Of a DNA stretch of 64,000 nucleotides, positions 9,259 through 64,000 are shown one piece after another. The notes beneath the pieces were generated by a model. It saw nothing but the letters and a program-made list of their open reading frames with translations, was not told where the DNA came from and did no database searches. Where the stretch lies: the NCBI GenBank assembly GCA_009859145.1, contig VRVR01000057.1, positions 62,001-126,000 on the forward strand. The letters are read 5' to 3'. The stretch comes from Andalucia godoyi And28 (taxonomy: Eukaryota > Protista > Jakobida). A program made the position numbers and the translations under genes. Position 1 is the first letter of the stretch. Each line of letters starts with the position of its first letter.

Positions 9259-9263
<5 letters not shown>

Positions 9264-9350
<87 letters not shown>
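9264..9350 (+). repeat. (CT)n microsatellite, about 43 units
   Basis: Directly visible; it explains the poly-RE and poly-SL spurious ORFs. Confidence 0.97.
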
Positions 9351-9352
<2 letters not shown>

Positions 9353-14613: not shown

Positions 14614-14648
<35 letters not shown>

Positions 14649-36500: not shown

Positions 36501-37623
36501 GAGAGCCAATTACATGAGCCGAGTCCATGCGATTAATCTGGGAAAAGTCAGACACGGGACTTGATGAAAGAAAACGAACCGAGGAGAGATCCACTTTCAC
36601 GGCAAACTCTTCAAAAGAAGAACTGGTAGGCGTGCCGCCATTCACTTGAAGATTCGCCGGACTCCCATTCTCTTCTTCATGCAATCGCAGTTCGAACACA
36701 TCCGTGTATTCTGCATGTTCGCCAAGCCCTCCGATTACATAGGTCGCTTCCCCGCAGGTCGCCATGTAAGCATTATACCGCGCAGACGGAACAGAAACTG
36801 ATTCCATAGCAGCAGTCACTTTTTTCCAGGTTCCACTGGACAGCGAAAACATCATACACGTTGACAAGACTGTTTTCGAAACGTCCGAAGCTCGACCACC
36901 ATAAATGAGCAATCCGCTGAGAGCAGGAATAAACGACATGGATAAGTAAGCGCGAGGAATGGGAACCTCAGTTCGTGCAGGAGGCGCAAAATACTTCCAA
37001 TTTCGAGATGATGTGGAAAACTGCCAGAGATCCGACACGAACACCCCGTCTTTGACATCGCCGCCGCAGACGAAAAACGAATCTGTGTGGACAGCCATTG
37101 CATGATTTTTGCGTGCCTGCGGTAAGGAACCGGAAACATGACATAAGCTCCAAGTGCGAGCCGGAAACGTGAATTCAAACACATCCGGAGACAATGAACC
37201 ATCGACACGACTGCCTCCAAAAAGAAAAGCAGAAGATCCAATGCAGCACAGTGAAAACCCACTGAGCGATTGTGGCCACGCAGATTGGTTGACGCTGGAT
37301 ACGCCAGTGAACAGATTCTTGTAAATGTCAAAGAAGGCGCACTGTGGCGGTTTGGAAGTGTCTAGATCACTAAACACGAACAAGCACAGCTTGAACGAAT
37401 CCGAATACGCAACTCGGGCGTAAGCAGCATGCTTTGGAATGTCTCCAGTAAGCCGGACCTCGGAAAATGACTGTGTATAGACGTCATAAACAAAGCAAGA
37501 CAAAAATGGGGAATGAGATGAGCTGGTAAACACGAAGACGGCGCTATTGACGAGAACCGAGCAGAGAATCTTGGAACTGTGTAGATCAAAACTCTGCAGT
37601 TTCTTCCATGACACCGTACTCAT
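33532..37623 (-). CDS. Kelch-repeat protein with C-terminal EF-hand/p25alpha (TPPP)-like repeats
   Basis: FLFGG, FVCGG, LIYGG and YVIGG Kelch blades; RLSQSKFSKLLRD...ADALFAKFVKPKAEKRIDFDE resembles p25alpha. Likely ATG at 37623. Confidence 0.75.
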   Translation of the reverse strand: MSTVSWKKLQSFDLHSSKILCSVLVNSAVFVFTSSSHSPFLSCFVYDVYTQSFSEVRLTGDIPKHAAYARVAYSDSFKLCLFVFSDLDTSKPPQCAFFDIYKNLFTGVSSVNQSAWPQSLSGFSLCCIGSSAFLFGGSRVDGSLSPDVFEFTFPARTWSLCHVSGSLPQARKNHAMAVHTDSFFVCGGDVKDGVFVSDLWQFSTSSRNWKYFAPPARTEVPIPRAYLSMSFIPALSGLLIYGGRASDVSKTVLSTCMMFSLSSGTWKKVTAAMESVSVPSARYNAYMATCGEATYVIGGLGEHAEYTDVFELRLHEEENGSPANLQVNGGTPTSSSFEEFAVKVDLSSVRFLSSSPVSDFSQINRMDSAHVIGSRRFITSSSFYSVREDQASMNLLFSIYSDIHSWFGCVQTLDVCILLRYCSCFDDEFHLEHLESIMRSILGFNSVLSGAEIIEYDEFCDIFSKVLETKKHIFTVSALLRTYLDHENPWEDISKDREELSRVFSPSLVHVHQRFSRHLKVAFMLYSTIDIHASFAPTWEEIVKHHAMLTLAEIMIFVTHFDIVPHLMHRFVVSSRLGPQSVHGVHIPQSNGSASSANFTYPEFLEFLSRSSEFVGSLSGAMPRSSFFDKDGQAASRLESFLSDIGFGDASRFVIHLRRSGLRASLWLRANPLEPSLEDMSVVPDGAESVDGSSYSVSTRSERSFDRFLQDAGLLKEELHRIYLFYSSFSDHKSSDLRLSQSKFSKLLRDIGVFDRTIPFLPLQADALFAKFVKPKAEKRIDFDECMDLLRDVSVFRFHPDLFQSGSFTHSLRDESFSRLLEEYILPRASRIDSVYTPDDIDTPELDSLLNSAKYKHSLRVIFGTYCTMESIEAARWDDVAASNKSLSLHELSVFAVDFDILPSVINKSQLFRVFRSTVLSRKLNAKETGVSYSSKNGESIGVIDDAFDFGKCLARIAEVAYSKHPYSEKLLSIVDRTEFLFQHLHFDDSNYIRNFLEKRGYRLGVIATWNYQLVPPTALTVVCVDDEDLHLLSPEKEADLRSIFIHYCGIESLDEIGFDISSCTLSQASFLKFCRNVRIEDGASHQCLKQFDSELSTRKGVDYKLFKRILLRISIHMGYGTEKLPVEALLRLLDRHVFPFGRRAGESIVPVVSRPRSSSGGQKVAPAVSPISTAPGSVPDVSGSVQIAASSTDFVSPRMQYPDLSQTFQKFEKSLLNLFLRYLEREKDRQQRVSDLAQPPQSTVISPHPLTRPRSASSASSASSASSASPSLSRIVLDKILQDFAVVPDLISRARLSRIAAAVTKVPQTAEYAAKISFQQFVDILAVAALEGYGVYPWKQQYPSESKKFHALLMSKLKLLPA

Positions 37624-38155
37624 CTCGAAACAGAGAACGGAAGATTTCAAATCAACCACAGTATGGTTCAAACAGAAAACACCTCAAGGAACGACAAGCG
37701 AAATACTCGGCAATTGCAGGGGGAGGGGAGAAGGGAGGATAACGACGACAATGAAGAAGAAGAAGAAGAAGAAGAAGGCAGCCAAGAAGAAGATACCAAT
37801 TGACGAAACACAACAACGGCGGGTGCAAGTGGTTGTTGGGGAAATTCCAGCAAATTTGCTGATTCAACGCCGAACAAAGATGACCGCCAGTGAAGGGGCC
37901 GACAAGAGTCGAATCGGAAACGACCACACTTTGAGAAAATTACGTGCGGGCAGTCCCGAAGGACCGTTGCGGATAATAACGCATCAACAGGCATCAACCA
38001 GTCAGCACGAAAAGTCCGTCCGTCGTCATTCGAAGGGGGGCTTCTGCACTGCTGGTTTTCAGATGATTTGCTTTTTTATTCTGGATGCTGTCTTTTTGTT
38101 TGGCGTTCTGTTAAATCGACGTGTCGGACTCGTGGACGCGGACTCTCTAATAACA

Positions 38156-41398: not shown

Positions 41399-42706
41399 TT
41401 AAATGCGGTTCTGGTACGACCCAGCTTTCGTGATGTAGCGAACCCACTTGACTGTCTGGTAGTTGGACTTCTCGAATACCTTCAAGAAACGGACATGCAA
41501 TCCGGACGAAGTAAACATCGGCACCTGGAAATCAAATCCAATGGGGGGTCGGGACCACGCATTCTTACCAGAAGTTGTTGCTATCAGATTAACTTCACCG
41601 CCGAGGGAATACTCTGCACCGCCAGGAAAACGGCGAATCTTCCAAATGATGCAAGAAGTCTCCGGATCGTACTTCGCCTTTCCAGCAGACATTGTTAAAG
41701 TGGTGTTTGCCGTGTTCGGTGGGCAGGGAATCTTGATAGCAACATTGGTCGCGAACAGCCGGGGAGAGAATGTGGCCTTAACCGTGATTTGGACCTCAAG
41801 ACGAGTTCTTCCAAGCTCACGAATGATAGGCGGCATCATCTTGAACGGCAAGATGATGTTGTCGGTGATACGATAACGCATGAGTTCGAATTCGCCATCT
41901 GGGGGAACGAACGAGATCGTTCGATCTGCATCGAATCGACCAAGCTTCACACACTGATGGAAAGTAATATCGTCGATTTCGATTCCAGACCCTCTTTTGG
42001 AAGAGGCAGATGATGCATGGCCCGCGTGTGTCGAGTCGGACACCATCTTGTCGTTCAAACCGAACTTGCATTCAGGCATGCCAGAAAGGAAACACTTCAT
42101 TGCAACCTGTCCAGAAACGTTGGCGTTCAGAACAGAACCTGAATTGGAGATCAGAGCATTCACTTGCTCAATAACATCCAAGAACACCTCATTGCGTTTG
42201 TACCGAATATTGTCGCGACGCCAAGTAATTGCACCAGTTGCCTGAATTGCAATCTTCGAGGAGTCCTCAAGAGAAACGTCTTGACTGTCTCCTTCGGGGG
42301 ACACGTACATCTTGAGCACATCGATCTCCATCGTTTGCGGGAATCCAAAGTCCATCACCTCGTCGAGAAGCTCATAGATCAAAACGTAGTTGGCACGAAC
42401 CGTGTCTTCGGAATAAACTCCTCCGAAGTACGCCTTGAAGATGTTCATCAGACGGTGCAAAAACGCGAAAACAGTCGTGGCATTCGCATTCCTACGCGTA
42501 ACCGCAACCATGTAGAGGTTGTTCTGCAAGACGTGCAAGAAAGTCAGCGAGCCCAGGGGACGGATAGGCGAGCGGTCGCCAAGCTTGGCAGAAATAATCT
42601 GCGTCTTGAACGCATCCGCCGCAGCACGGATGACAACGTCTTCGCGATAAGAGCGCGAGATCAATACCTCTCCGCGAGAGTTCAGAATCAGCAATGCAGA
42701 AAGCAT
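41399..42706 (-). CDS. AP2M1: AP-2 complex mu subunit, 435 aa
   Basis: MLSALLILNSRGEVLISRSYR, LIYELLDEVMDFGFPQ, NEVFLDVIE, FLSGMPECKFGLND, FHQCVKL, SFVPPDGEFELMRYR, FQVPMFTSSGLHVRFLKVFEK. ATG at 42706. Confidence 0.97.
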   Translation of the reverse strand: MLSALLILNSRGEVLISRSYREDVVIRAAADAFKTQIISAKLGDRSPIRPLGSLTFLHVLQNNLYMVAVTRRNANATTVFAFLHRLMNIFKAYFGGVYSEDTVRANYVLIYELLDEVMDFGFPQTMEIDVLKMYVSPEGDSQDVSLEDSSKIAIQATGAITWRRDNIRYKRNEVFLDVIEQVNALISNSGSVLNANVSGQVAMKCFLSGMPECKFGLNDKMVSDSTHAGHASSASSKRGSGIEIDDITFHQCVKLGRFDADRTISFVPPDGEFELMRYRITDNIILPFKMMPPIIRELGRTRLEVQITVKATFSPRLFATNVAIKIPCPPNTANTTLTMSAGKAKYDPETSCIIWKIRRFPGGAEYSLGGEVNLIATTSGKNAWSRPPIGFDFQVPMFTSSGLHVRFLKVFEKSNYQTVKWVRYITKAGSYQNRI

Positions 42707-43374
42707 ATTTAGATGTCTTGAGCTGAGCAAACGGAAGAAAACACAAACAGGAAACCGATAAAAAAAACTAAAACTACAACAAAACAATGTAACAAACAAA
42801 AACAAGAAAGAGCAGAAGACGAGCTGCTGCTGGATCGAGGAAAAGTGGAACTCGGAGCTTTGGGAAAGCTTTGGGAGGCCACTTGCCCAATGGCAGCAAC
42901 AAACGAGGCTTTTTTCTCGAAGATTTGTTTTGTGTACTCTCTCTACAGCAGGACGGCAGCAGGTTTTTTTTCGTATGGTTTTTTTACGACGGTTTGTAAC
43001 ATTTCCCTTTTTCCCGCTTTGTTCCGTTCCGCCTTGCCGAACTGCTTTCCGCAGGGTGTAGGGCCGTAGCCGGAGATGGGGCTCTCCCCCTTCTGCCAAA
43101 GAACACTCAGGTCTGCATTCTGGCATTCTCGCAGGTTCTGTGGAGGTCGTGGTGCCCACCGCCCTCCCCTCTCCTCTCTGCCCCGTGGTGTATTTGAAGT
43201 GCACTTGAACATGACAGGAAATAGCTTAGCGGTGCAAAACTGAGGTGTTCAGCAACAAGTTTACGAGTGGAGACAAAGGCACAGAAAGGAAACTCACCTG
43301 CGAATCAAAAATCACGTTTCCTCAGCGGGAGGCTATCAGTCAGACCATCCAGGCTCGTGCTGCACCGAATCAGA

Positions 43375-46195: not shown

Positions 46196-46975
46196 ATGTC
46201 ACGCGGATTCTCTGTTTTTGTGCTTGGAGCGTCTTCATGCACTGCGAAAAGCCTGTATCCCTTGCTGCTGAAGAAGAGTCATCTGCATCCCCTGACCTTG
46301 TCTCTGGTTGCACGGGATGCGAAAGAGCTTGAAAACGCCGAGCTGTTCATTCGGCAACTGGACCCGAGCGTCCGTGTGATTAAGTCCGTAGCGGCCGCAA
46401 ATGAGGATGGAGCGATCGGCGAAGCCGTGCAGCGCACGGTCACCGAGTTCGGATCTGTAGATGCGTCTGTGAACTTAATCGGGTCTATTCTTTTAAAGCC
46501 TGCTCATTTAACGTCTATAGAGGACTTTCGCACGGTTTGGGAAACGAACGTACAATCTTCTTTCAGCATGTTGCGCCACGTGACGAAGCACATGATGAGA
46601 CAGCCGCAAGGAGGTTCCGTCGTTCTCATGAGTTCTGCAGTTTCCAGACACGGGTTTGCAAATCACGAAGCCGTGTCTGCTGCAAAAGGCGCCATCAATA
46701 GTTTGACGTTGTCGGCTGCTTCCTCATATGCCAAGCATAAGATCCGAGTCAACGCAGTTCTTCCCGGCCTGACGTTCGCGAAAATGTCGGAACGCCTCAC
46801 ATCGAATTCCCAGGCTCTCCAGGCATCGATTGCAATGCATGCATTGGGTAAGATTGGAACCACAGAAGATGTTGCTCGATCGGTGTCCTTTTTCTTGGAC
46901 CCAGTGGAGTCTGGGCACGTTACTGGGCAATTGCTCGCGGTGGACGGAGGTCTCGGATCCGTCAAGGCGTCCTGA
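46196..46975 (+). CDS. Short-chain dehydrogenase/reductase (atypical, catalytic Tyr absent)
   Basis: Rossmann N-terminus, VNLIGSILLKPAH, N..SSF, LMSS, NHEAVSAAKG, IRVNAVLPG, VTGQLLAVDGG. Confidence 0.85.
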   Translation: MSRGFSVFVLGASSCTAKSLYPLLLKKSHLHPLTLSLVARDAKELENAELFIRQLDPSVRVIKSVAAANEDGAIGEAVQRTVTEFGSVDASVNLIGSILLKPAHLTSIEDFRTVWETNVQSSFSMLRHVTKHMMRQPQGGSVVLMSSAVSRHGFANHEAVSAAKGAINSLTLSAASSYAKHKIRVNAVLPGLTFAKMSERLTSNSQALQASIAMHALGKIGTTEDVARSVSFFLDPVESGHVTGQLLAVDGGLGSVKAS

Positions 46976-53826: not shown

Positions 53827-54465
53827 TTAGACTGCGCTGTAGGTCTCCTGCTTGGCCTGGAATCCGAGAAGACCAGCGATGCCAACAAGGAAGAACGACG
53901 AGACGAACGCAAGAACCCAGGACGGGCCGTATCCGATGTAGATCTCGACAGGTCCGATCTCAGCTCCCTTGTTTGCGTCGTCACGCAGTCTGTCCTCGAC
54001 GTCGCTCTCCTTAGGCTTCAGCTCGCCCTGAAGCAAGCAGCCCAGCAGGCAAAGAAACGCTGCAAAGCCAACGAGAGCTGCACCGAGCTTGAGGAACGAT
54101 ACCTTGCGTTCCGGGTTCTTCGATCCAAGAGCAATTGTTGCAGCAAGCCCAATAATAGTAATCACAATTCCCAATGAAATGCACGCAGCCGCAGCATTCC
54201 CAGCCTTCTGAGCCATCTTGCACGTATCTCTATCCTGGCACTTTGAGTCGGTGTATGAAAACGTGTCATCGTCGTTCACATAGCAGTTGACAAGATGAAC
54301 TTCCGTCTTCTGGATGCCGTACACGATCTTCGCCTCGCAGTTGTTGAATTGCTTGAACTTGATCATTTCGAGACCCCATGGCATCGTGCCGAGCGCAGCA
54401 ATCAGCATGATGATCGTCGAGATCGTCAGCACTGAAATAACAGCCAAAGGTCGGTCTATCTTCAT
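53827..54465 (-). CDS. Claudin/PMP22-like four-TM protein
   Basis: TM1 followed by PW...YG...C...C in the first loop, then three more TM segments. ATG at 54465. Confidence 0.7.
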   Translation of the reverse strand: MKIDRPLAVISVLTISTIIMLIAALGTMPWGLEMIKFKQFNNCEAKIVYGIQKTEVHLVNCYVNDDDTFSYTDSKCQDRDTCKMAQKAGNAAAACISLGIVITIIGLAATIALGSKNPERKVSFLKLGAALVGFAAFLCLLGCLLQGELKPKESDVEDRLRDDANKGAEIGPVEIYIGYGPSWVLAFVSSFFLVGIAGLLGFQAKQETYSAV

Positions 54466-55075
54466 CTTTCGGCAACCGCACGAGCCAATGTTTTCAAGAA
54501 TGAAAAGGAAAAAAGAAAAGAAAAGAAAAGAAAAGAAAAAAGAAGATGAAACCCCCCTCAACAAAAACGAACGGCGACGAAATAAAAGACGCAAAGGAGA
54601 AGAGAAAATCGGCAGGCGGAGGAACCGAGAATCAAAAGGGTAAGTGGAAATTCGGCGGCGGTCATCGCTGGTGCATGGCAAGTGCAAAATGGAGTGAGAG
54701 AGAGTCAAGCATCAAGCATGAAGCATCACGTGGCGTGGTTGAAGGGGGAGAGAGCAAAAAAAAACTACTGTAAAAAAAAAGAAAAAAGTAATGTCCCGCC
54801 CGCTGTATGAGCACTCTTTTCCGCCGATGTTGATTGGCAGGCTTTTTGTTTTTTCCTCCGCCACTCTTCGAAAGAAGCCGTTTCCCAATCGTTTTCCTCC
54901 TCCTACCGAACACTCAATCTATCAGGCATTTTATCAAATTATAATATTCGTATTACTTTTCTTTTTCTTTTTTTCTCTCTCTCTCCTTTCTATTTTTACT
55001 TCTTCTTTTCATTTTCTGTTGGTGTTCTCGTTGGTTACTGCCTTTTTTCTTTCTATTCCTTCTTTTCTTACTCTG

Positions 55076-55076
<1 letters not shown>

Positions 55077-55111
<35 letters not shown>

Positions 55112-55256: not shown

Positions 55257-58200
55257 ATGTCGAATCCTTTTGAACACATGTTCTTTCCGTTGAGCGAGCC
55301 GAGCACGGCCTCGAGCTCGAACACGCTAGCGTCGGTTCTTCATGCACGGGCAAGTGACGATCTGTTTCGCGATAAGCTTTTGTACACGTTTCTGGACAGC
55401 ACTGGACGCGAAGAAGCGAATCTCTCATTTTCGACATTACTTGCGTATGCGTCTTTGCTGGCGGAGGAGCTTGCACGAACGTACTCGGTGAAAGAGACGG
55501 ACCGCGTCCTCATCTTGACTCCGACACACGCTGCATTTCCAGTGTCTTTCTTGGCTTGCTTGTTGGGCAAGTTTGTCGCAGTTCCTGTTGCAGTCCCTTT
55601 CGATGAGCGTGGCATTGAGCGCCTGCTGGCCATTCAAAAGGACTCGGACTCGAAGGTGGTTCTTGTAACCTCCATGATGCGACCGTTTGAAGACATGTTT
55701 GAGAACCTCACCATGGTGTATGTCGATCAGTGGATGTCGAAAATAGAGAGTGCAAAAGGAAAGGCAGTCGCCCCGGAGGAAAATGTGTTGCGTTCGCAGA
55801 TTGCGCATCAGAAGATGGAGGATCTGGCGTTTTTGCAGTACTCCTCCGGCTCCACAGGAATGCCAAAGGGCGTTATGGTCGACAATTCCAATCTGACTGC
55901 AAATCACGAGATGATCAGACGTCGCTTGAACGCTACAGCGAGCGACACAATTGTTTCTTGGTGTCCTGCATATCATGATATGGGTCTCATTGGAAATGTG
56001 CTGTTTGCTGCGTACGTTGGTGCGAGACTGATTTTGCTTTCTCCCGTGGATTTCATCAGGAGACCACAGCTTTGGCCCCTGACGATCTCAAAATATAAGG
56101 GAACTATTTCTGGCGGTCCTAATTTTGGCTATGAATTGCTTGTCAGAAAGGTATCCGATGCGGACTGGGCCAAGCTGGATTTCTCTTCTTGGAGGGCTGC
56201 ATTTTCTGGAGCCGAAATGGTGAGAGCATCCACAATCCGTTCGTTCGCTGAGCGATTCGGACCCAGGGGTTTCCGCAATTCTGTGTGGTGGCCGTGCTAC
56301 GGACTCGCGGAAGCGACACTCATGGTAACGGCACCAAAGCAGTTGGTGGATCCCAGGATTCTCAAGTTTTCCGATCATCCTGACCTTGGAAAAAAGAACC
56401 CATGGATTGTGGCTGCTGACAAGGAATTTGTTTCCGTCGGAGAGATGGCAGACGGCCTTGACATTCGAATTGTGAATCCGGAGTCGTGTGTTGCCAAGGG
56501 CCCGCAAGAAGAAGGCGAAATATGGGTTTCTGGCCCGAACGTTTGCCGTGGGTATTGGAAAAAGGAGGAGCTCAATGGCGGCTTGTTCTTTGCGCAGATC
56601 GCAGGGGAAGCCTCTGGAAAGAGATACCTTCGTACCGGTGACATGGGCTTTTTCTTTGAAGACCAACTGTACATCACTGGCCGCATCAAGGACATTCTCA
56701 AGATTAATGGTGTTAACATTTTCCCAACAGATATCGAACAGGCTGCTGAGCTATCCTTCTCAGACATTCGTCCCGGTTGTTCCGCTTGCTTCGGCTATGC
56801 GCCTCCAGGACAAGGAGAACAAGCCGTCATTTTTGTGGAGCAGGCCAAGGGCGTTGCAGGGCAGTATGACGATGTCTGGTTTTCTCGTTTCCAGGCACTC
56901 ATTTCTTCCAAGTTTCGTCTGCAAATGTATGCTGTAGTGGTTCTGACGGAAAGAGTGGTTCCGAAGACGTCATCGGGGAAAATTCAACGTTATGCTTGCC
57001 GGAGAATGTTTGAGGATAATATATCGCAAAACCCTGCGGTTGTTGCCATGAAGGTTTTCGCGTCAGATTCGACGAGCCGAACCGCCGTTGACAATGAAGC
57101 TTCTTCGGAGCAACCTGCGGAGAGCACGTCGTTGATCACAAATGACGATTCAGATCTTCAATCCTTCGGCCAGCGCCTGCGATCTTCGTCGTCCATTGCA
57201 GCGTTCAAAAGCGTTTTGCGCGACTGGATTGCAGCAGAATTCGCAGTCAAGCCGAATGATATCCGTGATCGGGATAATTTTGCAACTTACGGCTTGAATT
57301 CGGCAACCGCTGTGTCCACGGCAGAGCGCTTAGGTCAGAGTCTGCAGGTGAAGCTGGGTCCGGACACGCTGTTCCAGCACTCGACGATGGACGCATTAAC
57401 GTCCCATCTTGCCGCCAAATTGAGTTTGTTCGGAAAAGGTGTTCCCACAACGAGTACAGACGATGCCTCAGTGACCAAGACCGTTCTGGAGCAATCTGCA
57501 GCGCCGTCGTCTGTCGTTCAAAAGGAAATCGCAGTGGTGGGAATCAGTTTGCGACTCCCATGCGTGTCTTCTGTCTCAGACCTTTGGAAAGCCTTAATGG
57601 AAGGAAAGGAATGCCGCAATGCGGTGAAGAGGTCTCGGTTTATTGATTCAGATCCGTCGGAGGGCGACGAGTCTGTGGAAGGTTACTTCTTGGATAATAT
57701 TTCAGAATTTGACCACAAGTTCTGGAAGATATCTCACGCGGAAGCCGCAATGATGGATCCCCAGCACCGTATTCTTCTCGAACTGGCAGTGGAATGTTTG
57801 CATGACAGTGGGGCTGCAATATCGGACGTCAAGGGGCTGGACATCGGAGTGTATGTCGGGCTGTCTGGACACGAGTACTCGATCTTGACTTCTGGCTTGA
57901 AGGCACAGTCCTCAGCGCAAGCGTCCTATGTTGCAACTGGCGGATCTGGTGCCATGGCAGCCAATCGCATTTCATATTTGCTGGATCTGCACGGACCATC
58001 CATGTCTGTTGATACTGCTTGTTCATCGTCTCTGGTGGCACTGGATTTGGCTTTCCAAGACTTGCGCCAGGGGAAGACGACGTCGGCATTGGTTGCTGCC
58101 TCGAACCTCATTCTTACTCAAGGATTGTGCACCTCGTTGGAAAAGGCAGGATTTCTTGCTCCCGATGGTCGTTGCAAGACCTTTGATGCGTCCGCAGATG

Positions 58201-61200
58201 GGTATGGTCGTGCAGAGGGCGCATGCATGGTGTTGTTGAAGCCTCTTGAAGATGCCATCCGTGAGGGAAATAGAATTTATTCTGTCGTCCTGGGAACACA
58301 CTCCAATTCCAATGGTCGATCAATGAGCCAAACAGCTCCGTCGTTTGACGCACAGGTTCGCTTGATGAAGTCTGCCTACGAATCCTACGGCTTGAATCCC
58401 GCGGACGTATTTTACGTTGAAGCTCACGGCACGGGAACCAGTGCTGGCGATCCCATTGAAAGCAAAGCACTGGGCGACGTCATTGGACAAGGGAAAAATC
58501 GTCTGAGTCCGTGCATGGTTGGCTCCATCAAGTCAAACATTGGACACACGGAAGCTGCTGCAGGTCTTGCTGGTTTCATCAAGGCTTCGTTGATCGCATT
58601 CCATGGAGTAATTCCGCCCACGCTCCACGTGAAGCAGCTGAATCCTTCGATTGATTTCGGAGGGATGAATTTGAAGGTAGCTCTGCAGGTCATGCAATGC
58701 CCTGAAAATGGGCTGATCGGAATCAATTCTCTTGGTTTCGGGGGAACGAACGCGCATGCCATTTTGCGCAGAGTCAAACCATCTGAGAGGGAGAACATAG
58801 AGAAGATTCTGTCAGAATCCTTGAAGTCTCTGTCGGTGAAAGATGCTTCTGAACCGCAAGTCATGAAGTGGCGCAAAAAGTATGCGCAGGAACCGGTCCC
58901 ATTGCCGATTTCCGGAATGACATCCGAAGGACTTGCTAAGTATGCAAAGAAACTGGAAGATTGGGCGACCGAGTCAGGTGTTGACTTGTTGGACGTTGCC
59001 GCTGCCTTGGCTGTCGCAGAACATTACGAGAAGCGATTTGCCCCGTTAGTCGGGTCCGTTCAAGAAATTGCAAAGGCTCGCGACGGTGTTTCTCGCAGCA
59101 CCAACAACAATCAAGCCTCCCAGCTGGCTTTCGTCTTCTCAGGACAGGGTTCCGAGTGGATCGGGATGGGAAAAGCGCTCTATTTGCGGTCTCCCGTCTT
59201 CCAAAAAGCCGTGGACAATGTGGACAGCTTGCTGTCTGCAGAATTTGACATTTCCATTGCCGAAGAGCTTCTGCGTGAGCGTCCTGATGATGAGAATGAG
59301 AAATGGAATACCGACTATGCTCAGCCCCTGTTGTTTTCTGTTCAGTGGGCTCTGACGGTCCTGCTGAAAAGTCTAGAAATCACACCAACAGTCTGCGTCG
59401 GCCACTCTGCGGGAGAAATAGCGGCGGCGGCAGCTGCCGGCATTCTGGACTGGAAGCTGGCGGCCCGTCTTGCGGCTCTTCGTGGACGGTACATGAACGA
59501 ATGCACTGGCAACGGAGGCATGCTTGCTGTGGAGCTGTCGGAGGAAGATGTCTCTGACAGCGTTGGTGGAGACATGATGGCGCGTTCCGTTGTTCTTGCC
59601 ACTGTCAATTCCTCCAGTTCTTGCGTGTTGTCCGGTCCGATCAAGGAACTCCAGGACATTGAACAGGATCTTCGTTCCAAGAAAGTGCGTGTGAAATTCA
59701 TTACGAAATCCTATGCGTTTCATCATCCGTCGCTGTCTTCTGCGGCTTCAAAGCTAAAGGAGCGCCTTGAGAAGGACTGCATTCTTGTTTCTGGAGTCGC
59801 GACTGCAGGATTTGTCTCAACATCGGAATTGTTCTCTGTTCAGGCTGGCGAGCGGTGTGTGCGCCTTGCTGAGCCGGCCTATTGGGCATGCCAGATCACG
59901 AATCCTGTCCGATTCCGCGACGCTGCTGTGAATTCTTTTAGTCAATTTGGCATGGATGCGTTTGTGGAGATTTCTCCGCATCCAGTGCTGCTCCCTCGTC
60001 TTGCGGAGATTGTGGAGGTGCTCTCCAATCTTCTATCTGGTACTCGTTCGATACTGGTCCTCGAAAGTCTCAAACGAGGTGGTAACGATCGAAGCAGTTT
60101 TCTGCGCGTCGTTGGGGATCTTTGGGCCGCCGGATATCCCGTGGCATGGCATCGGTTGTTTGGAGTTCCCGCGTCAAAGGTCGATAAGGTTCGCCTACCT
60201 GCGTATTCGTGGGATCGCGTCCCTTGTTGGGTAGACGGAAAGATTCAAAACGCCGTCTCAGTCGCCGGAAACGGAGGCACACATGCGTTGGGAGCGTCCT
60301 CAGTCCCTGGCGCTGACGATGTGGATCTGTCCAACACGGATGTGTCCTATTTGGCACCGATCATTGCGAGTTTGTTTGCGGAATTCATGGATATCAAGAC
60401 GGATGAAATCAAGTTCGAACGTCCGCTGCAGGATTATGGCATGGATTCCCTTGCGAAGGCTCGTTTCAGGAATGTGGTTTTTGATGTGTTTGGAGTTCGT
60501 TTCCCAATGCACATTCCCCAGGAATTGATCACCATCGACTTCTTGGCAAACAACGTATCGGAGCAATTGGGGGAGGTTGCAAAACGCGACTCTGTGCAGG
60601 TTGCACACTCCACCTCTCATGACTCCGGTTCTGCCACGTCAGCGCCAGCACAGAGTGCGGTGACTGGTCCAGTTCAAGCCAACCGCGGTCGAATTCGAAT
60701 CGAAGCCGATCTGTCAGAGGATATCAAGGAATTCCAGGAGCGAATGAAGGTAATTGACAAGTACAAGATCGAGAATCCGTTTTACCGAGTTCAAGATTCG
60801 GTTTCGGAGAACATTGCGATCATTAATGGCCGTCGTCTCGTCAATTTTTCGTGCTACAACTACTTGGGTCTCAGCGGATCAGCGACGCTGAACGAAGCCG
60901 CAAAACAGTCCATTGATAAGTTTGGAACGTCCGTTTCGGGCTCTCGCATCCTGTCTGGAGAAAAGACGGTGCATCGTGAACTGGAGGCGGAGCTGGCGAG
61001 CTTCCTCGGATGCGAGGATGCTCTAGTTATGCTTGGTGGCCATTCGTGCAATGAATCGACAATTGGACATATTGTTGACGCGGATTACGACCTGATTATT
61101 GCTGACGAGGCCGTCCACAATTCCATCGCAAAGGGAATGCAGTTATCAAAGTGCACGTATGTGATGTTTGCGCATAACGACATGGAAGATCTGGAGGCGA

Positions 61201-62327
61201 AGCTCACTTTGCATCGGTATGCATACCGTCGGTGTTTGCTGGTGGTTGAAGGACTGTACAGCATGGATGCTGACTTCCCCAACCTTTTCCAACTGGTCCG
61301 CATCAAAGACAAGTACAAGTGCATTTTGTACATTGATGAAGCTCATTCTTGTGGAGTCATGGGCGATACGGGGCGTGGAATCACGGAGCTCTTTCCGATC
61401 AACAAGGACGATCCGTCCATTATTTTGATGGGAACGCTCAGCAAAGCACTTGGATCCTGTGGTGGATATTTAGCTGGAAAGCGAGAGGTCATCAATTATC
61501 TTCGTTACACGATTCCGGGCTTCATCTTTTCAGCGGGTATTACCCCGCCGAATACAGCGTCTGCTCTTGCAGCCGTCCGTGAATTAAAGCGCACAAACGT
61601 ACGCGTTCGGAATCTGCAGTTTAATGCGCAGCGATTCGCATCTCGTGCTCTTGAGCGCAAACTGGATGTCCGATTCCGGTTCCCTTCTGGTATTGTCATG
61701 GTGCTGTTGTATGACTCGGATCGCTGTGTGGCTGTTTCGGCGATGATGTACGAGCTGGGGTATTTTGTCAATCCGGCAATATACCCTGCTGTTCCGATGG
61801 GCCAGGCTCGTTTACGGTTCTTTTTGTCGTCGCTGCATACTGAAGAGCAGATTGATCAGTGTGTCGACACTCTGGCAGAGGTGGTTCAACAAGTCTTCCA
61901 AGGATCGGAGGATGACATTCGGGAGCTTGCTGCCGGTGCACGCTCCCACCGGATGTCGCTGCGTGGCGATATGGAATCCATTTCGGCCATTGCGGTTCCT
62001 GGGGTGATTCGCCAAGGATGGCTCGTGAAGCGTGGACATCTTCGGAAGAATTGGCTGATGCGATGGTTCCGTCTCACTCCAAAGTACTTCAGCTATGGCC
62101 CTTCTGAGCACGACCGTGCGAAGAGATCGATCCCGCTTTCTTCCATCCAGTCCGTGACCATGCTGGACCAAGCGGTCCTTGGGCAAAAGAACTGCTTCAT
62201 GGTTAATGGCGGTGGGTTTGTGTTGTACGTGTATGCATCAACCGAGCGGAGTGCCCAGGAGTGGGTCAATTCGCTGATCAAGGCAAAGCGCGAAGCGAAT
62301 CTAACAGAATCCAGATGCGATCAATAG
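55257..62327 (+). CDS. Hybrid megasynthase FAAL-ACP-KS-AT-ACP-alpha-oxoamine synthase-PH (RedL-like type I PKS)
   Basis: FAAL: LQYSSGSTGMPKG, CYGLAEATL, YLRTGDMGF, PKTSSGKIQR. ACP1: YGLNSA. KS: DTACSSS, EAHGTGT, KSNIGHTEAAAG. AT: VGHSAGE, YAFHH. ACP2: YGMDSL. PLP oxoamine synthase: FSCYNYLGL, VEGLYSMD, DEAHS, GTLSKALG. PH: RQGWLVKRGHLRKNWLMRWFRL...AQEWVNSL. Confidence 0.93.
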   Translation: MSNPFEHMFFPLSEPSTASSSNTLASVLHARASDDLFRDKLLYTFLDSTGREEANLSFSTLLAYASLLAEELARTYSVKETDRVLILTPTHAAFPVSFLACLLGKFVAVPVAVPFDERGIERLLAIQKDSDSKVVLVTSMMRPFEDMFENLTMVYVDQWMSKIESAKGKAVAPEENVLRSQIAHQKMEDLAFLQYSSGSTGMPKGVMVDNSNLTANHEMIRRRLNATASDTIVSWCPAYHDMGLIGNVLFAAYVGARLILLSPVDFIRRPQLWPLTISKYKGTISGGPNFGYELLVRKVSDADWAKLDFSSWRAAFSGAEMVRASTIRSFAERFGPRGFRNSVWWPCYGLAEATLMVTAPKQLVDPRILKFSDHPDLGKKNPWIVAADKEFVSVGEMADGLDIRIVNPESCVAKGPQEEGEIWVSGPNVCRGYWKKEELNGGLFFAQIAGEASGKRYLRTGDMGFFFEDQLYITGRIKDILKINGVNIFPTDIEQAAELSFSDIRPGCSACFGYAPPGQGEQAVIFVEQAKGVAGQYDDVWFSRFQALISSKFRLQMYAVVVLTERVVPKTSSGKIQRYACRRMFEDNISQNPAVVAMKVFASDSTSRTAVDNEASSEQPAESTSLITNDDSDLQSFGQRLRSSSSIAAFKSVLRDWIAAEFAVKPNDIRDRDNFATYGLNSATAVSTAERLGQSLQVKLGPDTLFQHSTMDALTSHLAAKLSLFGKGVPTTSTDDASVTKTVLEQSAAPSSVVQKEIAVVGISLRLPCVSSVSDLWKALMEGKECRNAVKRSRFIDSDPSEGDESVEGYFLDNISEFDHKFWKISHAEAAMMDPQHRILLELAVECLHDSGAAISDVKGLDIGVYVGLSGHEYSILTSGLKAQSSAQASYVATGGSGAMAANRISYLLDLHGPSMSVDTACSSSLVALDLAFQDLRQGKTTSALVAASNLILTQGLCTSLEKAGFLAPDGRCKTFDASADGYGRAEGACMVLLKPLEDAIREGNRIYSVVLGTHSNSNGRSMSQTAPSFDAQVRLMKSAYESYGLNPADVFYVEAHGTGTSAGDPIESKALGDVIGQGKNRLSPCMVGSIKSNIGHTEAAAGLAGFIKASLIAFHGVIPPTLHVKQLNPSIDFGGMNLKVALQVMQCPENGLIGINSLGFGGTNAHAILRRVKPSERENIEKILSESLKSLSVKDASEPQVMKWRKKYAQEPVPLPISGMTSEGLAKYAKKLEDWATESGVDLLDVAAALAVAEHYEKRFAPLVGSVQEIAKARDGVSRSTNNNQASQLAFVFSGQGSEWIGMGKALYLRSPVFQKAVDNVDSLLSAEFDISIAEELLRERPDDENEKWNTDYAQPLLFSVQWALTVLLKSLEITPTVCVGHSAGEIAAAAAAGILDWKLAARLAALRGRYMNECTGNGGMLAVELSEEDVSDSVGGDMMARSVVLATVNSSSSCVLSGPIKELQDIEQDLRSKKVRVKFITKSYAFHHPSLSSAASKLKERLEKDCILVSGVATAGFVSTSELFSVQAGERCVRLAEPAYWACQITNPVRFRDAAVNSFSQFGMDAFVEISPHPVLLPRLAEIVEVLSNLLSGTRSILVLESLKRGGNDRSSFLRVVGDLWAAGYPVAWHRLFGVPASKVDKVRLPAYSWDRVPCWVDGKIQNAVSVAGNGGTHALGASSVPGADDVDLSNTDVSYLAPIIASLFAEFMDIKTDEIKFERPLQDYGMDSLAKARFRNVVFDVFGVRFPMHIPQELITIDFLANNVSEQLGEVAKRDSVQVAHSTSHDSGSATSAPAQSAVTGPVQANRGRIRIEADLSEDIKEFQERMKVIDKYKIENPFYRVQDSVSENIAIINGRRLVNFSCYNYLGLSGSATLNEAAKQSIDKFGTSVSGSRILSGEKTVHRELEAELASFLGCEDALVMLGGHSCNESTIGHIVDADYDLIIADEAVHNSIAKGMQLSKCTYVMFAHNDMEDLEAKLTLHRYAYRRCLLVVEGLYSMDADFPNLFQLVRIKDKYKCILYIDEAHSCGVMGDTGRGITELFPINKDDPSIILMGTLSKALGSCGGYLAGKREVINYLRYTIPGFIFSAGITPPNTASALAAVRELKRTNVRVRNLQFNAQRFASRALERKLDVRFRFPSGIVMVLLYDSDRCVAVSAMMYELGYFVNPAIYPAVPMGQARLRFFLSSLHTEEQIDQCVDTLAEVVQQVFQGSEDDIRELAAGARSHRMSLRGDMESISAIAVPGVIRQGWLVKRGHLRKNWLMRWFRLTPKYFSYGPSEHDRAKRSIPLSSIQSVTMLDQAVLGQKNCFMVNGGGFVLYVYASTERSAQEWVNSLIKAKREANLTESRCDQ

Positions 62328-62469
62328 CGCATTAGAAGAGTCCCCAACGCAGCCTTTCCCCTTTCTTCTTGTTCCTCTTTTTTCTTTTTTCTTTTTTCGT
62401 TTTGTTCTTTTGTAGTCATAAACAATTCTGTGTGTGTGTGTGTGTGAGTGAGTGATGTACAATAGAGAG

Positions 62470-64000
62470 TTAGATACTGCTGCTACCAGATTCTACAGCC
62501 TCTTCCGATTGGGGTTTGACTGCAGGGCCCGGAGTTGAAGAAGCGGCAGCGCCCAGCAGCCCTGGGATTCCGATATTCTCAGGCGCAAGTGTCTTGATTT
62601 CCTTGATGAGCAGACCCTTTTCGTCTCTGAATTGGTCATCCTCCTTTTCGACCAAGAATCCCTCAAGAAAAGCAACCAGCCTCGTCTGATTCTTCCAAAG
62701 AATCGCCTTGATTTCTGGGGGCTTATTCGGGTTCGCAACGAAGATCTTGAACACATGGAAAGCTTCAAACTGAATATTCCTCGATTTGTCCTTGAGCAAC
62801 GTCATCATGCGCTTCAGATGGTCCGGAACCGCAATGTACTTTGTCATGACCTTGAAGTTTGTTCTGTCCAACAACAGCTCTCCCAAAAGCTTGAGAGACT
62901 GTCTGCGCGTCACGTAGTTTTCACTCGAGAGCAGAGCGTTGTACCGGGTAAAGAACGTTTCGAACCGGCTAAGCATGTATTCCGCAGCTGGAGCTTTGTG
63001 TTTCGTCAATGCCTCCTTGAACGTCGCAAGCGCATCGGACTGAACGTCAAAGTTGGATGAATCCAAGTATGGGAAAAAGAGTTCGATCCGGCCAGCCTCT
63101 GGATCCAATGGAGCCGTAAGCACGATTGTAGACAGCGAAGCAGACGATCCAGTCGATGAAAACGGGGCGCTCGGAGTCGGGGAAGAAGAAGAGGACGTCG
63201 GTGTTGAGGCAAACAGGTTCGTAGCTGACAGCTGCGACGAGAGGGACATGAGAGAATTTGACGATGGGATCGAGGACAGGTCTGCGGATTGCGACGATGA
63301 AGTGACCAGCGTAGCAAGCACAGACGGCGAGTCCATCGACGTTCCCGAGAGTGAATGTGAGAGCAGCAGCGAATGCGAGTGGGAAAGAGTTGGAGTTGAG
63401 TTTGTGGAGCTGGATGACCCAGAGCCCGAATTCGACGAGCTCAGAGATGCAAGCTGAATATTCTTTGAGGCCTGTCCATAGATGAGGACACGCGTTTCCT
63501 CGAACAGAGGAGCGCAGGCAGTCGTTATCGGAGAAGGGGTGGTCTTGATACTAGCAAAGAACAGACGCGCGACGGAGTCCAACCGCAGAGCTTCCCGGAG
63601 CATGAGCCCGCAGTTCAGCGCGATTTCAGGGACCCGGTATCCAAGAAGCAGCAGTTCGAGGATTTCAGGATCGGCAACCTTTGACGGATTTCGCTTGGCA
63701 ACAAGCGAAAACGCCTGCACAATGTCCTTGCGAGCCTCAAAAGACAGCCGAACCATGCACTTGCACAACAGGACCAACGTGCAGCCATGCATCAATGCCT
63801 CGCCCAGCGCATCTGGGTCTTCCGTAAGCAACCCCTTGAATAGCCCAAGGTACTTGACCAGGTCTTCCTGCGCCTTCCGCACGATCTTTGAATCTCCTGC
63901 ATCCGATGACATCGTATGCACAACAGTCGTAGTCGTACTTTCGAAATTCGACACTACAACCAGAGTTGACAGCGCGCTGCATAGCCGGTTGCACACTTCC
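62470..64000 (-). CDS. CAB39: MO25/CAB39 (Hym1) scaffold protein, 5' end beyond the window, with a long Ser/Thr-rich insertion
   Basis: [76 protein letters not shown]. The frame is open to the window edge. Confidence 0.93.

What the first reader, a model, noticed from the sequence alone, without database searches (positions are those of the whole stretch)
61990..62327. Pleckstrin-homology domain fused to the end of a polyketide synthase
Seen: after the oxoamine synthase comes VIRQGWLVKRGHLRKNWLMRWFRL...KRSIPLS...NCFMV...LYVYAS...AQEWVNSL, a canonical PH fold with a basic beta1-beta2 loop. Established: this kind of PH domain binds phosphoinositides and targets lipid-handling proteins such as CERT and FAPP to membranes. 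Inference: a eukaryotic targeting module was grafted onto a bacterial-type enzyme, possibly placing lipid synthesis under phosphoinositide control. I do not know of this architecture elsewhere.
Basis: partly seen in the sequence, partly recalled or inferred. Interest (0 to 1): 0.7.

Follow-up and report, generated by a model that had tools for sequence, protein, structure and literature searches.

The report
PH domain on a RedL-type polyketide synthase
A protist gene for a bacterial-style fatty-acid-to-aminoketone synthase ends in a genuine, evolutionarily conserved eukaryotic membrane-binding (PH) domain, a combination found in only one other sequence, which suggests the enzyme is tethered to a phosphoinositide-bearing membrane.

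Summary
Window 55257-62327 (+) is one uninterrupted 2356-codon ORF with the domain order FAAL-ACP-KS-AT-ACP-alpha-oxoamine synthase (AONS)-PH. The PH domain (aa 2248-2346, nt 61998-62294) scores 52-58 bits against Pfam PH (cut-off 25). Its model is a seven-strand sandwich with a C-terminal helix, closest to the TAPP1, DAPP1, ARAP3 and Akt PH domains. The gene lies in an intron-poor eukaryotic genome (neighbours include Mo25, AP-2 mu, SPEF2 and a polycystin channel). One orthologue, on a metagenome contig from a related organism, carries the same in-frame fusion. Its PH is 71% identical, with saturated synonymous and few non-synonymous changes, so the domain is under selection. Among the best 150 hits of an exhaustive search of 1.84 billion representative proteins, no other protein joins AONS to PH. 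Without the PH, the enzyme has the RedL architecture. A full-length bacterial homologue sits in a prodiginine-like cluster with a RedH-like ligase, and a jakobid homologue lacks the PH. The likely mechanism has two parts: RedL-like synthesis of a 2-alkyl-4-oxopyrroline or amino-diketone lipid, and membrane tethering by the basic PH domain. Lipid binding, its specificity and any regulatory role are untested. This is a new variant of a known kind, of moderate interest.

The parts
55257..62327 (+). Whole gene: an uninterrupted ORF of 2356 codons plus a TAG stop (258 kDa, pI 5.9). Domain order is FAAL-ACP-KS-AT-ACP-AONS-PH.
   Evidence: ORF list and translation; Pfam domains; physical parameters.
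55320..57014 (+). N-terminal fatty acyl-AMP ligase (FAAL)-type adenylation domain, aa 22-586, with the SSGSTG motif at aa 196.
   Evidence: Pfam AMP-binding aa 51-434, E 3.8e-56. The best NCBIfam N-terminal matches are fatty-acid--AMP ligase models (PRK05850 339.9 bits, PRK09192, FadD21/32/28), against 148 bits for amino-acid adenylation. All are below the curated cut-offs.
57216..57410 (+). First carrier domain (ACP1), aa 654-718. The phosphopantetheine serine lies in YGLNSA (S682).
   Evidence: Pfam PP-binding; motif position.
57522..58631 (+). Ketosynthase, aa 756-1125, with an intact Cys-His-His triad (DTACSS C922, EAHGTG H1057, NIGHT H1097).
   Evidence: Pfam ketoacyl-synt E 2.1e-70 and Ketoacyl-synt_C E 8e-39; motifs.
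59130..60107 (+). Acyltransferase, aa 1292-1617. It has GHSAGE (S1384) and a YAFH motif at 1486, the xAFH type that suggests malonyl-CoA.
   Evidence: Pfam Acyl_transf_1 E 1.3e-54; motifs. The substrate reading rests on published AT motif rules recalled from my own knowledge.
60363..60557 (+). Second carrier domain (ACP2), aa 1703-1767, with GMDSL (S1731).
   Evidence: Pfam PP-binding, two stretches, and ACP_SdgA_C; motif.
60837..61871 (+). PLP-dependent alpha-oxoamine synthase (AONS) chain-release domain, aa 1861-2205, with DEAH at 2027 and the PLP lysine K2063 in GTLSKA.
   Evidence: Pfam Aminotran_1_2 E 7.9e-42. The nearest solved structures are bacterial serine palmitoyltransferase 3a2b/8guh (221 bits), Thermus AOS 7poa and KBL. 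It is 77% identical to the orthologue, pN 0.18.
61872..61997 (+). Linker, aa 2206-2247. It is acidic (pI 4.7), predicted disordered and poorly conserved.
   Evidence: 39% identity to P0001 with an in-frame 9-residue indel and no stop in either species. AF2 pLDDT is below 50 over the part modelled, aa 2215-2246.
61998..62294 (+). PH domain, aa 2248-2346 (Pfam 2250-2344 = nt 62004-62288). Candidate ligand-contact residues are K2258 (beta1), R2263/K2264 (loop), R2269 (beta2), Y2280 (beta3) and R2290 (beta4). W2336 lies in the C-terminal helix.
   Evidence: It is 71% identical to the orthologue's PH, with pN 0.20 against pS 0.72.
62295..62327 (+). Ten-residue C-terminal tail (ANLTESRCDQ) and the TAG stop. 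The stop of the convergent Mo25 gene lies 143 nt downstream.

Best explanation
The finding is the 3' end of a single intronless eukaryotic gene for a one-module, non-reducing type I polyketide synthase with the RedL architecture (FAAL-ACP-KS-AT-ACP-AONS). A canonical eukaryotic PH domain has been added to it through a disordered linker of about 40 residues.

Inferred chemistry, by analogy with RedL:
- The FAAL domain adenylates a free fatty acid and loads it on ACP1.
- KS and AT add one malonyl unit, giving a beta-ketoacyl thioester on ACP2. There is no KR, DH or ER domain, so the keto group stays.
- The PLP-dependent AONS domain releases the chain by decarboxylative Claisen condensation with an amino acid (glycine in RedL).
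- The resulting 2-amino-3,5-diketone can cyclise spontaneously to a 2-alkyl-4-oxopyrroline.

Inferred role of the PH domain: it is strongly basic and attaches this large, otherwise acidic and soluble enzyme to an anionic, phosphoinositide-containing membrane. The hydrophobic substrate would then be taken from that membrane, the amphiphilic product delivered to it, or both. A phosphoinositide signal could gate this recruitment.

Shown here: the domain content and order, intact catalytic motifs, the PH fold, the eukaryotic host, conservation of the fusion and purifying selection on the PH. Inferred: the product, the amino-acid substrate, lipid binding by the PH, its specificity and any regulatory consequence.
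For: - One ORF with all seven domains and intact catalytic motifs.
- PH identity by Pfam, PDB sequence search, AF2 and Foldseek.
- The same AONS-linker-PH fusion in frame in P0001/L001, from a different organism. Identity is 60% over AT-ACP-AONS-PH, downstream genes are not syntenic, and the AP-2 mu protein of a relative (88% identical) comes from the same sample.
- PH pN 0.20 against a saturated pS of 0.72, similar to the catalytic AONS domain.
- The neighbours are eukaryotic housekeeping and flagellar genes.
- RedL-type assignment. P0155 aligns over aa 31-2208 at 32.5% identity with the same Pfam order. It is followed by two Rieske proteins, a KASIII, an O-methyltransferase and an 890-aa protein whose best NCBIfam matches are RedH (835.8 bits, full length) and PigC.
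- RedL chemistry as described in PMC11188435.
- Four of the five usual phosphoinositide-contact positions align with those of TAPP1 (K2258, R2269, Y2280, R2290). The domain has pI 10.4.
Against: - No experiment or transcript data were available.
- The first basic residue of the (K/R)-x-R beta2 motif is Leu2267 in both orthologues, so high-affinity 3-phosphoinositide binding is not assured. Many PH domains bind lipids weakly or bind proteins instead.
- The window holds no prodiginine-type partner genes (no RedH/PigC or Rieske oxygenase), so the end product differs from that of RedL pathways.
- The amino-acid substrate could not be assigned. SPT, AOS and KBL structures match about equally well.
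- RedL itself was not compared directly. The link goes through domain architecture and the gene context of P0155. The RedH match of that neighbour is below NCBIfam's curated cut-off (835.8 against 1350 bits).
- Only two sequences carry the fusion.
Confidence: 0.55

Rival explanations
1. The PH domain is real and part of the protein, but it does not target phosphoinositides. It might bind a protein partner such as a small GTPase, a scaffold or a PPTase. It might act as an intramolecular (auto)regulatory module, as in Akt. It might also bind the enzyme's own amphiphilic substrate or product.
For: The (K/R)-x-R motif is incomplete (L2267). Only a minority of PH domains bind phosphoinositides with high affinity and specificity (established knowledge). 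The flexible linker would allow the PH to fold back on the AONS or ACP domains.
Against: The domain is strongly basic (pI 10.4, net about +10). K2258, R2269, Y2280 and R2290 are kept at the canonical contact positions and are identical in the orthologue. The nearest sequence and fold relatives include several PH domains solved with inositol phosphates or described as phosphoinositide-binding: TAPP1, DAPP1, ARAP3, PLEKHA7 and Akt.
Confidence: 0.25
2. The enzyme is functionally a sphingoid-base-type synthase. It would be an SPT-like condensation of serine or alanine with an acyl chain, giving a long-chain amino-ketone lipid. The PH would couple it to membrane lipid homeostasis, much as PH domains do for CERT, FAPP and OSBP.
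For: The closest solved structures to the AONS domain are bacterial serine palmitoyltransferases (3a2b/8guh, 221 bits). NCBIfam SPT models match at 267-294 bits.
Against: A condensation-competent KS-AT pair with no ketoreductase precedes the AONS. The chain reaching AONS is therefore a beta-ketoacyl thioester, as in RedL and PigH, not a plain fatty acyl group. All SPT model scores are well below their cut-offs (500-670 bits). The PH is not of the CERT/FAPP type.
Confidence: 0.12
3. The fusion is an artefact. The PH region would be a separate gene or exon, a read-through of an annotation gap, or an assembly chimera joining bacterial and eukaryotic DNA.
For: No transcript evidence was available. 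Met codons lie shortly upstream of the PH in both species (M2233 and M2239 in the window). The window's own PKS protein was not found in the protein collections, although its AP-2 mu protein was.
Against: There is no stop codon between AONS and PH. The same junction occurs in an independently assembled contig from another organism, with a 27-nt (in-frame) indel in the linker. The gene is flanked on both sides by eukaryotic genes on one contig. GC and GC3 of the PKS domains resemble each other (GC3 0.53-0.59), and GC3 of the PH is 0.66. The PH is under purifying selection.
Confidence: 0.04

Closest known systems
RedL of the Streptomyces coelicolor undecylprodiginine pathway, and RedL-like synthases of prodiginine-type clusters
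   Same: The domain order is identical apart from the PH: acyl-adenylating domain, ACP, KS, AT, ACP, then a PLP-dependent oxoamine synthase. There are no reducing domains. The full-length bacterial homologue P0155 (32.5% identity over aa 31-2208) sits next to RedH-, RedG-, RedP- and RedI-like genes. The expected chemistry is fatty acyl + malonyl + amino acid giving a 4-keto-2-alkylpyrroline (PMC11188435).
   Different: The window gene is eukaryotic and stands alone, with no prodiginine partner genes nearby. It carries a C-terminal PH domain that no bacterial homologue examined has. RedL itself was not aligned here.
ANDGO_02935 of the jakobid Andalucia godoyi (P0139, 2358 aa; named '6-deoxyerythronolide-B synthase EryA1' by its source)
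   Same: It is the best-scoring full-length homologue (1194 bits, about 35% identity over aa 44-2213) and the only named eukaryotic one. It has the same FAAL-ACP-KS-AT-ACP-AONS order.
   Different: It ends 14 residues after the AONS domain and has no PH. In the C-terminal half of AONS it is no closer (45%) than many proteins from unnamed sources (50-52%). A common eukaryotic origin is therefore not established.
3-phosphoinositide-binding PH domains: TAPP1 C-terminal PH (1eaz), DAPP1 (1fao), SWAP-70 (2dn6), ARAP3, Akt
   Same: These are the best sequence and fold matches. The window PH shares the beta1 Lys, beta2 Arg, beta3 Tyr, beta4 Arg and the helix Trp. Its HLRKNW loop and L-M-R-W-F strand resemble HRRKNW and T-E-R-W-F of SWAP-70.
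   Different: Identity is only 24-32%. The first basic residue of (K/R)-x-R is Leu. No binding data exist. Those proteins are adaptors and kinases, not biosynthetic enzymes.
   Same: The general logic is the same: a PH domain places a lipid-processing activity on a particular membrane.
   Different: FAPP1 PH matches only at E 0.56-1.2 by sequence, and CERT PH is rank 36 by fold. Those proteins transfer lipids rather than synthesise them.
PigH/RedN (ACP-ACP-AONS) of prodigiosin MBC biosynthesis, and Fum8-type AONS release in fungal sphinganine-analogue pathways
   Same: An oxoamine synthase releases a carrier-bound (beta-keto)acyl chain by condensation with an amino acid. In PigH this is followed by cyclisation to a pyrrole ring (one search lists PMC7376913).
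   Different: Those are separate proteins or have different architectures. None has a PH domain.

Membership tests
PH domain (Pfam PF00169) | Sequence match to the family profile above the curated threshold | tested here: met
   51.8 bits in the whole protein and 57.8 bits in the tail alone, against a cut-off of 25.1. The orthologue P0001 also carries PF00169.
PH domain (Pfam PF00169) | Seven-stranded beta-sandwich closed by a C-terminal alpha-helix that contains the conserved Trp | tested here: met
   The AF2 model has strands at tail residues 37-44, 52-59, 63-67, 76-79, 83-89, 99-104 and 107-112, and a helix at 116-140, with pLDDT about 80-86. All of the 50 best Foldseek matches listed are PH domains or PH-containing proteins. 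W2336 lies in AQEWV. This is a prediction, not a solved structure.
Phosphoinositide-binding PH subclass (K-x-Sm-x6-11-(K/R)-x-R-Hyd-Hyd motif) | Basic residues of the beta1-beta2 motif, plus the beta3 Tyr and beta4 Arg contacts | tested here: inconclusive
   K2258-R-G, six residues, then L2267-M-R2269-W-F. The beta1 Lys, the small residue, the spacing, the final Arg and the two hydrophobic residues are present. The first (K/R) is Leu in both orthologues. Y2280 and R2290 align with the TAPP1 Tyr and Arg. The motif definition is from my own knowledge (Isakoff 1998; Dowler 2000).
Phosphoinositide-binding PH subclass | Measured binding to a phosphoinositide or membrane | not testable with these tools
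   Needs a lipid overlay or liposome assay and localisation experiments.
CERT/FAPP/OSBP-type (PI4P) PH domains | Closest similarity to that subgroup | tested here: not met
   FAPP1 (2kcj, 3rcp, 2mdx) matches at E 0.56-1.2. CERT 4hhv is Foldseek rank 36. TAPP1, DAPP1, ARAP3, Akt and SWAP70 rank first.
RedL-type synthase | Domain order: acyl-AMP-forming domain, ACP, KS, AT, ACP, AONS, with no reducing domains | tested here: met
   Pfam order and coordinates. The same order occurs in P0139, P0155, P0159 and P0156, which align over nearly the full length.
RedL-type synthase | Intact catalytic residues in every domain | tested here: met
   C922/H1057/H1097 (KS), S1384 (AT), S682 and S1731 (ACPs), K2063 and DEAH 2027 (AONS), SSGSTG at aa 196 (FAAL).
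RedL-type synthase | Located in a prodiginine-type gene cluster (RedH/PigC ligase, Rieske oxygenase, MBC genes) | tested here: not met
   No such genes occur in the 64-kb window. The bacterial homologue P0155 does have them.
RedL-type synthase | Product is a 4-keto-2-alkylpyrroline made from fatty acyl, malonyl and glycine units | not testable with these tools
   Needs heterologous expression and LC-MS or NMR.
Alpha-oxoamine synthase family (BioF/KBL/SPT/ALAS) | Fold-type I PLP enzyme with the conserved Lys, His and Asp and similarity to solved members | tested here: met
   Aminotran_1_2 E 7.9e-42. Matches to solved SPT, AOS, KBL and ALAS structures reach 221 bits, E 1.8e-64. K2063 and DEAH are present.
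Fatty acyl-AMP ligase (FAAL) | Closer to FAAL profiles than to acyl-CoA ligase or amino-acid adenylation profiles | tested here: inconclusive
   FAAL models score 340 and 318 bits, against 279 for an acyl-CoA ligase model and 148 for amino-acid adenylation. All are below their curated cut-offs. The FAAL-specific insertion was not examined.

The most novel reading that the evidence does not exclude
The PH domain makes this synthase a direct effector of phosphoinositide signalling. A PI 3-kinase-type (or other PIP) signal would recruit the enzyme to a specific membrane and switch on local production of an alkyl-pyrroline or aminoketone lipid mediator. This would be a eukaryotic secondary-metabolite or signal synthase gated by a second-messenger lipid, an arrangement not described for any polyketide synthase.
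Probability: 0.15. Interest if true: 0.75.

Novelty: new variant of a known kind. Interest (0 to 1): 0.52.

Why it matters
Polyketide synthases are usually treated as soluble assembly lines, and where they work in the cell is rarely encoded in the polypeptide. Here a bacterial-type, RedL-like synthase living in a protist genome has acquired the most typical eukaryotic membrane-address module and kept it under selection. This is a clear example of how a probably horizontally acquired biosynthetic enzyme is adapted to eukaryotic cell biology. It also gives a testable handle: a small, separable domain that should determine where the product is made. If the PH binds a signalling phosphoinositide, it would link lipid second messengers to small-molecule biosynthesis. 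For engineering, it suggests a natural design for tethering PKSs to membranes that supply fatty-acid substrates or accept hydrophobic products. PH domains are, however, among the most promiscuously shuffled eukaryotic domains, so a single new fusion partner is interesting rather than revolutionary.

Tried and rejected
- A word-index protein search with the PH tail alone found only 15 candidates and no hits, not even P0001. It was uninformative and cost one search.
- The metagenome scan with PH-specific peptide patterns (KNWLMRW, GQ[KQ]NCFM) gave 459 pattern matches, none confirmed.
- A second scan with AONS patterns gave only two remote loci at 28% identity. No further fused orthologues turned up. 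The collection evidently lacks the sample that holds L001.
- An exact look-up of the window's PKS protein found nothing on record.
- tblastn against plasmids found no record covering 80% or more of the query, only FAAL-ACP-KS-AT segments at about 30-35% identity.
- Literature searches for PKS + oxoamine synthase + PH, for FAAL + oxoamine synthase + PKS, and for PH domain + type I PKS returned no paper describing such a fusion. The thraustochytrid guess gave nothing relevant.
- Taxon identification through AP-2 mu failed. Apart from one 88%-identical metagenome protein and two oversized gene models (Malus, Pleurotus; 41-47% identity), most full-length relatives are only about 53-61% identical across many supergroups, with Naegleria the highest-scoring ordinary named hit. 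I first suspected a thraustochytrid and dropped that idea. A jakobid or Discoba affinity is only hinted at by the Andalucia PKS homologue and by Andalucia's similar genome style.
- Synteny downstream of the gene is absent between the window and L001.
- No second PH domain exists in the window that could be the donor.
- The amino-acid specificity of AONS could not be read from database matches.
- I considered modelling AONS+PH together and left it out, because the tool returns no inter-domain confidence.
Full report
**1. What is in the sequence.** The interval 61990-62327 is the end of a single open reading frame, 55257..62327 on the + strand, with 2356 codons and a TAG stop. Pfam finds seven domains in this order:
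- AMP-binding, aa 51-434
- PP-binding, aa 654-718
- ketoacyl synthase N- and C-terminal parts, aa 756-1125, followed by the KS-AT linker
- acyltransferase, aa 1292-1617
- a second PP-binding/ACP, aa 1703-1767
- aminotransferase class I/II, aa 1861-2205
- PH, aa 2250-2344

The PH match scores 51.8 bits in the whole protein and 57.8 bits in the isolated 142-residue tail, against a curated cut-off of 25.1. A sequence search of the PDB returns PH domains at every significant rank. The best is SWAP-70/KIAA0640 (2dn6, E 2.6e-12), followed by TAPP1 (1eaz), pleckstrin, cytohesins/GRP1, DAPP1 and Akt.

**2. Fold.** I made an AlphaFold2 model of the tail from the two-sequence alignment A1. It gives seven beta-strands followed by a long C-terminal helix, with pLDDT about 80-86 inside the domain and below 50 for the preceding 32 residues. 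Foldseek against the PDB gives 185 matches at E<=0.001. The top ones are TAPP1, DAPP1 with Ins(1,3,4,5)P4, ARAP2/3, GRK2, pleckstrin C-PH, Akt, PEPP1 and PLEKHA7. CERT PH appears only at rank 36. FAPP1 PH matched by sequence only at E 0.56-1.2.

**3. Ligand-site residues.** The domain has pI 10.4 (16 K+R against 6 D+E), whereas the whole protein has pI 5.9.
- In the HMMER alignment to TAPP1, K2258 (beta1), R2269 (beta2), Y2280 (beta3) and R2290 (beta4) coincide with the TAPP1 Lys, Arg, Tyr and Arg.
- The beta1-beta2 loop adds R2263 and K2264.
- The usual motif is K-x-small-x6-11-(K/R)-x-R-Hyd-Hyd (my own knowledge of Isakoff 1998 and Dowler 2000). The window reads K2258-R-G ... L2267-M-R2269-W-F, so the first (K/R) is Leu.
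- SWAP-70, the best sequence match, likewise has T-E-R-W-F and an HRRKNW loop.
- All of these residues are identical in the orthologue.

Lipid binding is plausible, but its specificity cannot be read from the sequence.

**4. One polypeptide or an artefact?** There is no stop codon between the AONS and PH domains. A protein search with AONS+PH found exactly one protein that also carries PF00155 and PF00169. This is P0001, a 912-residue product truncated by the end of a 5-kb JGI metagenome contig (L001).
- It aligns with the window protein from the AT domain to the end at 60% identity. The PH is 71% identical.
- The linker is only 39% identical and has a nine-residue (27-nt, in-frame) indel.
- Nei-Gojobori counts give pS 0.72 (saturated) and pN 0.20 for the PH. 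This is essentially the same as for the catalytic AONS domain (pN 0.18) and lower than for the AT (pN 0.35).
- The gene downstream differs between the two contigs: Mo25 in the window, an unrelated 389-residue ORF in L001.
- The same metagenome sample also holds an AP-2 mu protein 88% identical to the window's.

The second sequence therefore comes from a related but distinct organism, and the fusion has been kept by selection. An assembly chimera or annotation read-through is very unlikely.

**5. Host.** The large ORFs of the window encode eukaryotic proteins:
- Mo25, AP-2 mu, a polycystin-type channel with EF hands and SPEF2 (a flagellar protein)
- a kelch/p25-alpha protein, a SUMO-E1-like ThiF protein and lariat debranching enzyme
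- an ABCG-type transporter and a protein rich in ephrin-receptor-like repeats

Genes are long, uninterrupted, closely packed and on alternating strands. Flanks carry polypyrimidine tracts and (CA)n/(TG)n microsatellites. The organism is thus an intron-poor, flagellated eukaryote. I could not place it. AP-2 mu is about equally distant (mostly 53-61% identity) from Naegleria, fungi, amoebozoans and haptophytes. The compact, intron-poor style resembles what is described for the jakobid Andalucia godoyi (PMC7050145). That species' own homologue is only about 35% identical, however.

**6. What the enzyme is.** All catalytic motifs are intact:
- SSGSTG at aa 196 in the adenylating domain
- carrier serines S682 and S1731
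- KS Cys922/His1057/His1097
- AT GHSAGE (S1384) with a YAFH motif
- AONS DEAH 2027 and the PLP lysine K2063

The N-terminal domain matches fatty-acid--AMP ligase profiles better than acyl-CoA ligase or amino-acid adenylation profiles, though below curated cut-offs. The AONS domain is closest to solved bacterial serine palmitoyltransferases, Thermus AOS and KBL. There is no KR, DH or ER domain.

An exhaustive HMMER search of 1.84 billion representatives used the C-terminal half of AONS plus the PH. Among its hits, BLAST then singled out several proteins that align with the window protein over almost its full length. Pfam shows that four of them share the same FAAL-ACP-KS-AT-ACP-AONS order:
- P0139, 2358 aa, about 35% identity
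- P0155, 2273 aa, 32.5% identity
- P0159
- P0156

P0139 is ANDGO_02935 of Andalucia godoyi. P0156 and P0159 lie in bacterial contexts, next to a two-component system and a PapA-like acyltransferase respectively.

P0155 is followed by two Rieske proteins, a KASIII, an O-methyltransferase, an FMN oxidoreductase and an 890-residue protein. The best NCBIfam matches of that last protein, over its full length, are undecylprodigiosin ligase RedH (835.8 bits) and prodigiosin ligase PigC (791.6 bits), about twice the score of any PEP synthase model but below the curated cut-offs. This is the gene set of a prodiginine-type cluster, in which the synthase of this architecture is RedL.

According to PMC11188435, RedL receives a dodecanoyl group on one ACP and makes beta-ketomyristoyl thioester on the other. 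Its PLP-dependent step condenses this with glycine and releases CO2, and the product cyclises to 4-keto-2-undecylpyrroline. The window enzyme should perform the analogous sequence. The chain length, the amino acid and the fate of the product are unknown. No prodiginine partner genes lie in the window.

**7. How rare is the fusion?**
- In the word-indexed search of 5.8 billion clusters, only P0001 combined PF00155 with PF00169 among the 120 listed.
- In the exhaustive search, only P0001 matched through both parts (query 2-295). Every other listed AONS match ended at query position 149-191, where AONS ends, usually at the very C-terminus of the hit.
- The three hits with two matched stretches have no PH.
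- The only other hit matching the PH part is a myosin with four PH domains.
- Two metagenome DNA scans found no further orthologue.
- No paper in the library combines the terms.

Limits: only the best 150 representatives were visible, so a fusion with a much more divergent AONS could have been missed. Fusions of PH to PKSs that lack an AONS were not searched for.

**8. Interpretation.** A eukaryotic targeting module has been added to a bacterial-type enzyme, but inside a eukaryote. It was most likely added after, or independently of, the lineage leading to the Andalucia homologue, which lacks it.

The most economical function is membrane tethering. A basic PH on a flexible acidic linker would hold a 258-kDa acidic synthase at an anionic, phosphoinositide-bearing membrane. 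That is where a free fatty-acid substrate and an amphiphilic product partition. Regulation by a phosphoinositide signal is possible but unsupported. The main rival is that the PH serves protein-protein or intramolecular regulation.

I rate the PH domain and the fusion as essentially certain. The RedL-type assignment is likely (about 0.8). Membrane or phosphoinositide targeting is moderately likely (about 0.55-0.6).

**9. Verdict.** This is a new variant of a known kind: a RedL-type PKS with an appended PH domain that has not been described, conserved in two organisms. Interest is moderate. The fusion is unusual and experimentally tractable. On the other hand, PH domains are highly mobile in eukaryotic proteomes, and no functional consequence has been shown.

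Noticed in passing
P0139 (EukProt EP00762_Andalucia_godoyi_P006500, ANDGO_02935): The jakobid Andalucia godoyi encodes a 2358-aa FAAL-ACP-KS-AT-ACP-AONS synthase, the RedL architecture without a PH. Its source names it '6-deoxyerythronolide-B synthase EryA1', which looks like a misnomer. RedL-type synthases thus occur in at least two eukaryotic lineages.
   Followed up: partly
L010 (Logan SRR23126149_50828) 217-17038: A bacterial contig carries a prodiginine-like cluster. It holds a RedL-like PKS (P0155), two Rieske proteins, a KASIII, an O-methyltransferase, an Acg-family FMN oxidoreductase, a RedH/PigC-like ligase (835.8/791.6 bits) and an ABC1/aminotransferase-III protein.
   Followed up: partly
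window 61947-61958 (aa 2231-2234; R2232 and S2234): The linker is otherwise poorly conserved, but an R-x-S-hydrophobic motif is shared: HRMSL in the window and KRTSV in P0001. It could be a basophilic-kinase phospho-acceptor site between AONS and PH. With only two sequences this may be chance.
   Followed up: no
window 55077-55109 and 62429-62454: A perfect (CA)16.5 microsatellite lies 150 nt upstream of the start codon, and a (TG)13 array lies about 100 nt after the stop. Both flanks are rich in polypyrimidine and polypurine tracts (54509-54546, 54957-55017, 62356-62411).
   Followed up: partly
window 62470-63996 (-): A convergent Mo25-like gene has its stop only 143 nt from the PKS stop. The Pfam match spans 441 residues against a 332-position model, which implies a Ser/Thr-rich insert. 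The ORF probably continues beyond the window end.
   Followed up: no
window 33532-37671 (-): A 1379-aa ORF combines an N-terminal kelch beta-propeller with a p25-alpha (TPPP) domain. This is an unusual pairing of a propeller with a tubulin-polymerisation-promoting module.
   Followed up: no
window 9604-14814 (+): A 1736-aa ORF has at least eight ephrin-receptor-like cysteine-rich repeats, plus NCD3G and TNFR-like cysteine-rich matches. It is probably a large secreted or surface protein.
   Followed up: no
window 41399-43204 (-): The AP-2 mu ORF as listed (601 aa from a GTG) is longer than the 435-aa protein on record for this very sequence (P0284, 100% identical over 73% of the ORF). The true start is probably an internal ATG. 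That protein is in the collection, whereas the PKS of the same window is not.
   Followed up: partly
P0241 (ENA, 1476 aa): The closest non-orthologous relative of the PH domain among the proteins fetched is the fourth PH (35% identity) of a myosin with a motor domain and four tandem PH domains, from an unnamed eukaryote.
   Followed up: no
window 53827-54708 (-) and 46196-46975 (+): The divergent upstream neighbour is a 293-aa ORF whose only Pfam match is a weak holin-like one below the cut-off (25.9 against 28.4 bits). A short-chain dehydrogenase (adh_short_C2, E 8.6e-41) lies 8 kb upstream. Neither is evidently linked to the synthase, but a reductase acting on the oxopyrroline (as RedK does) would be of this general type.
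   Followed up: no
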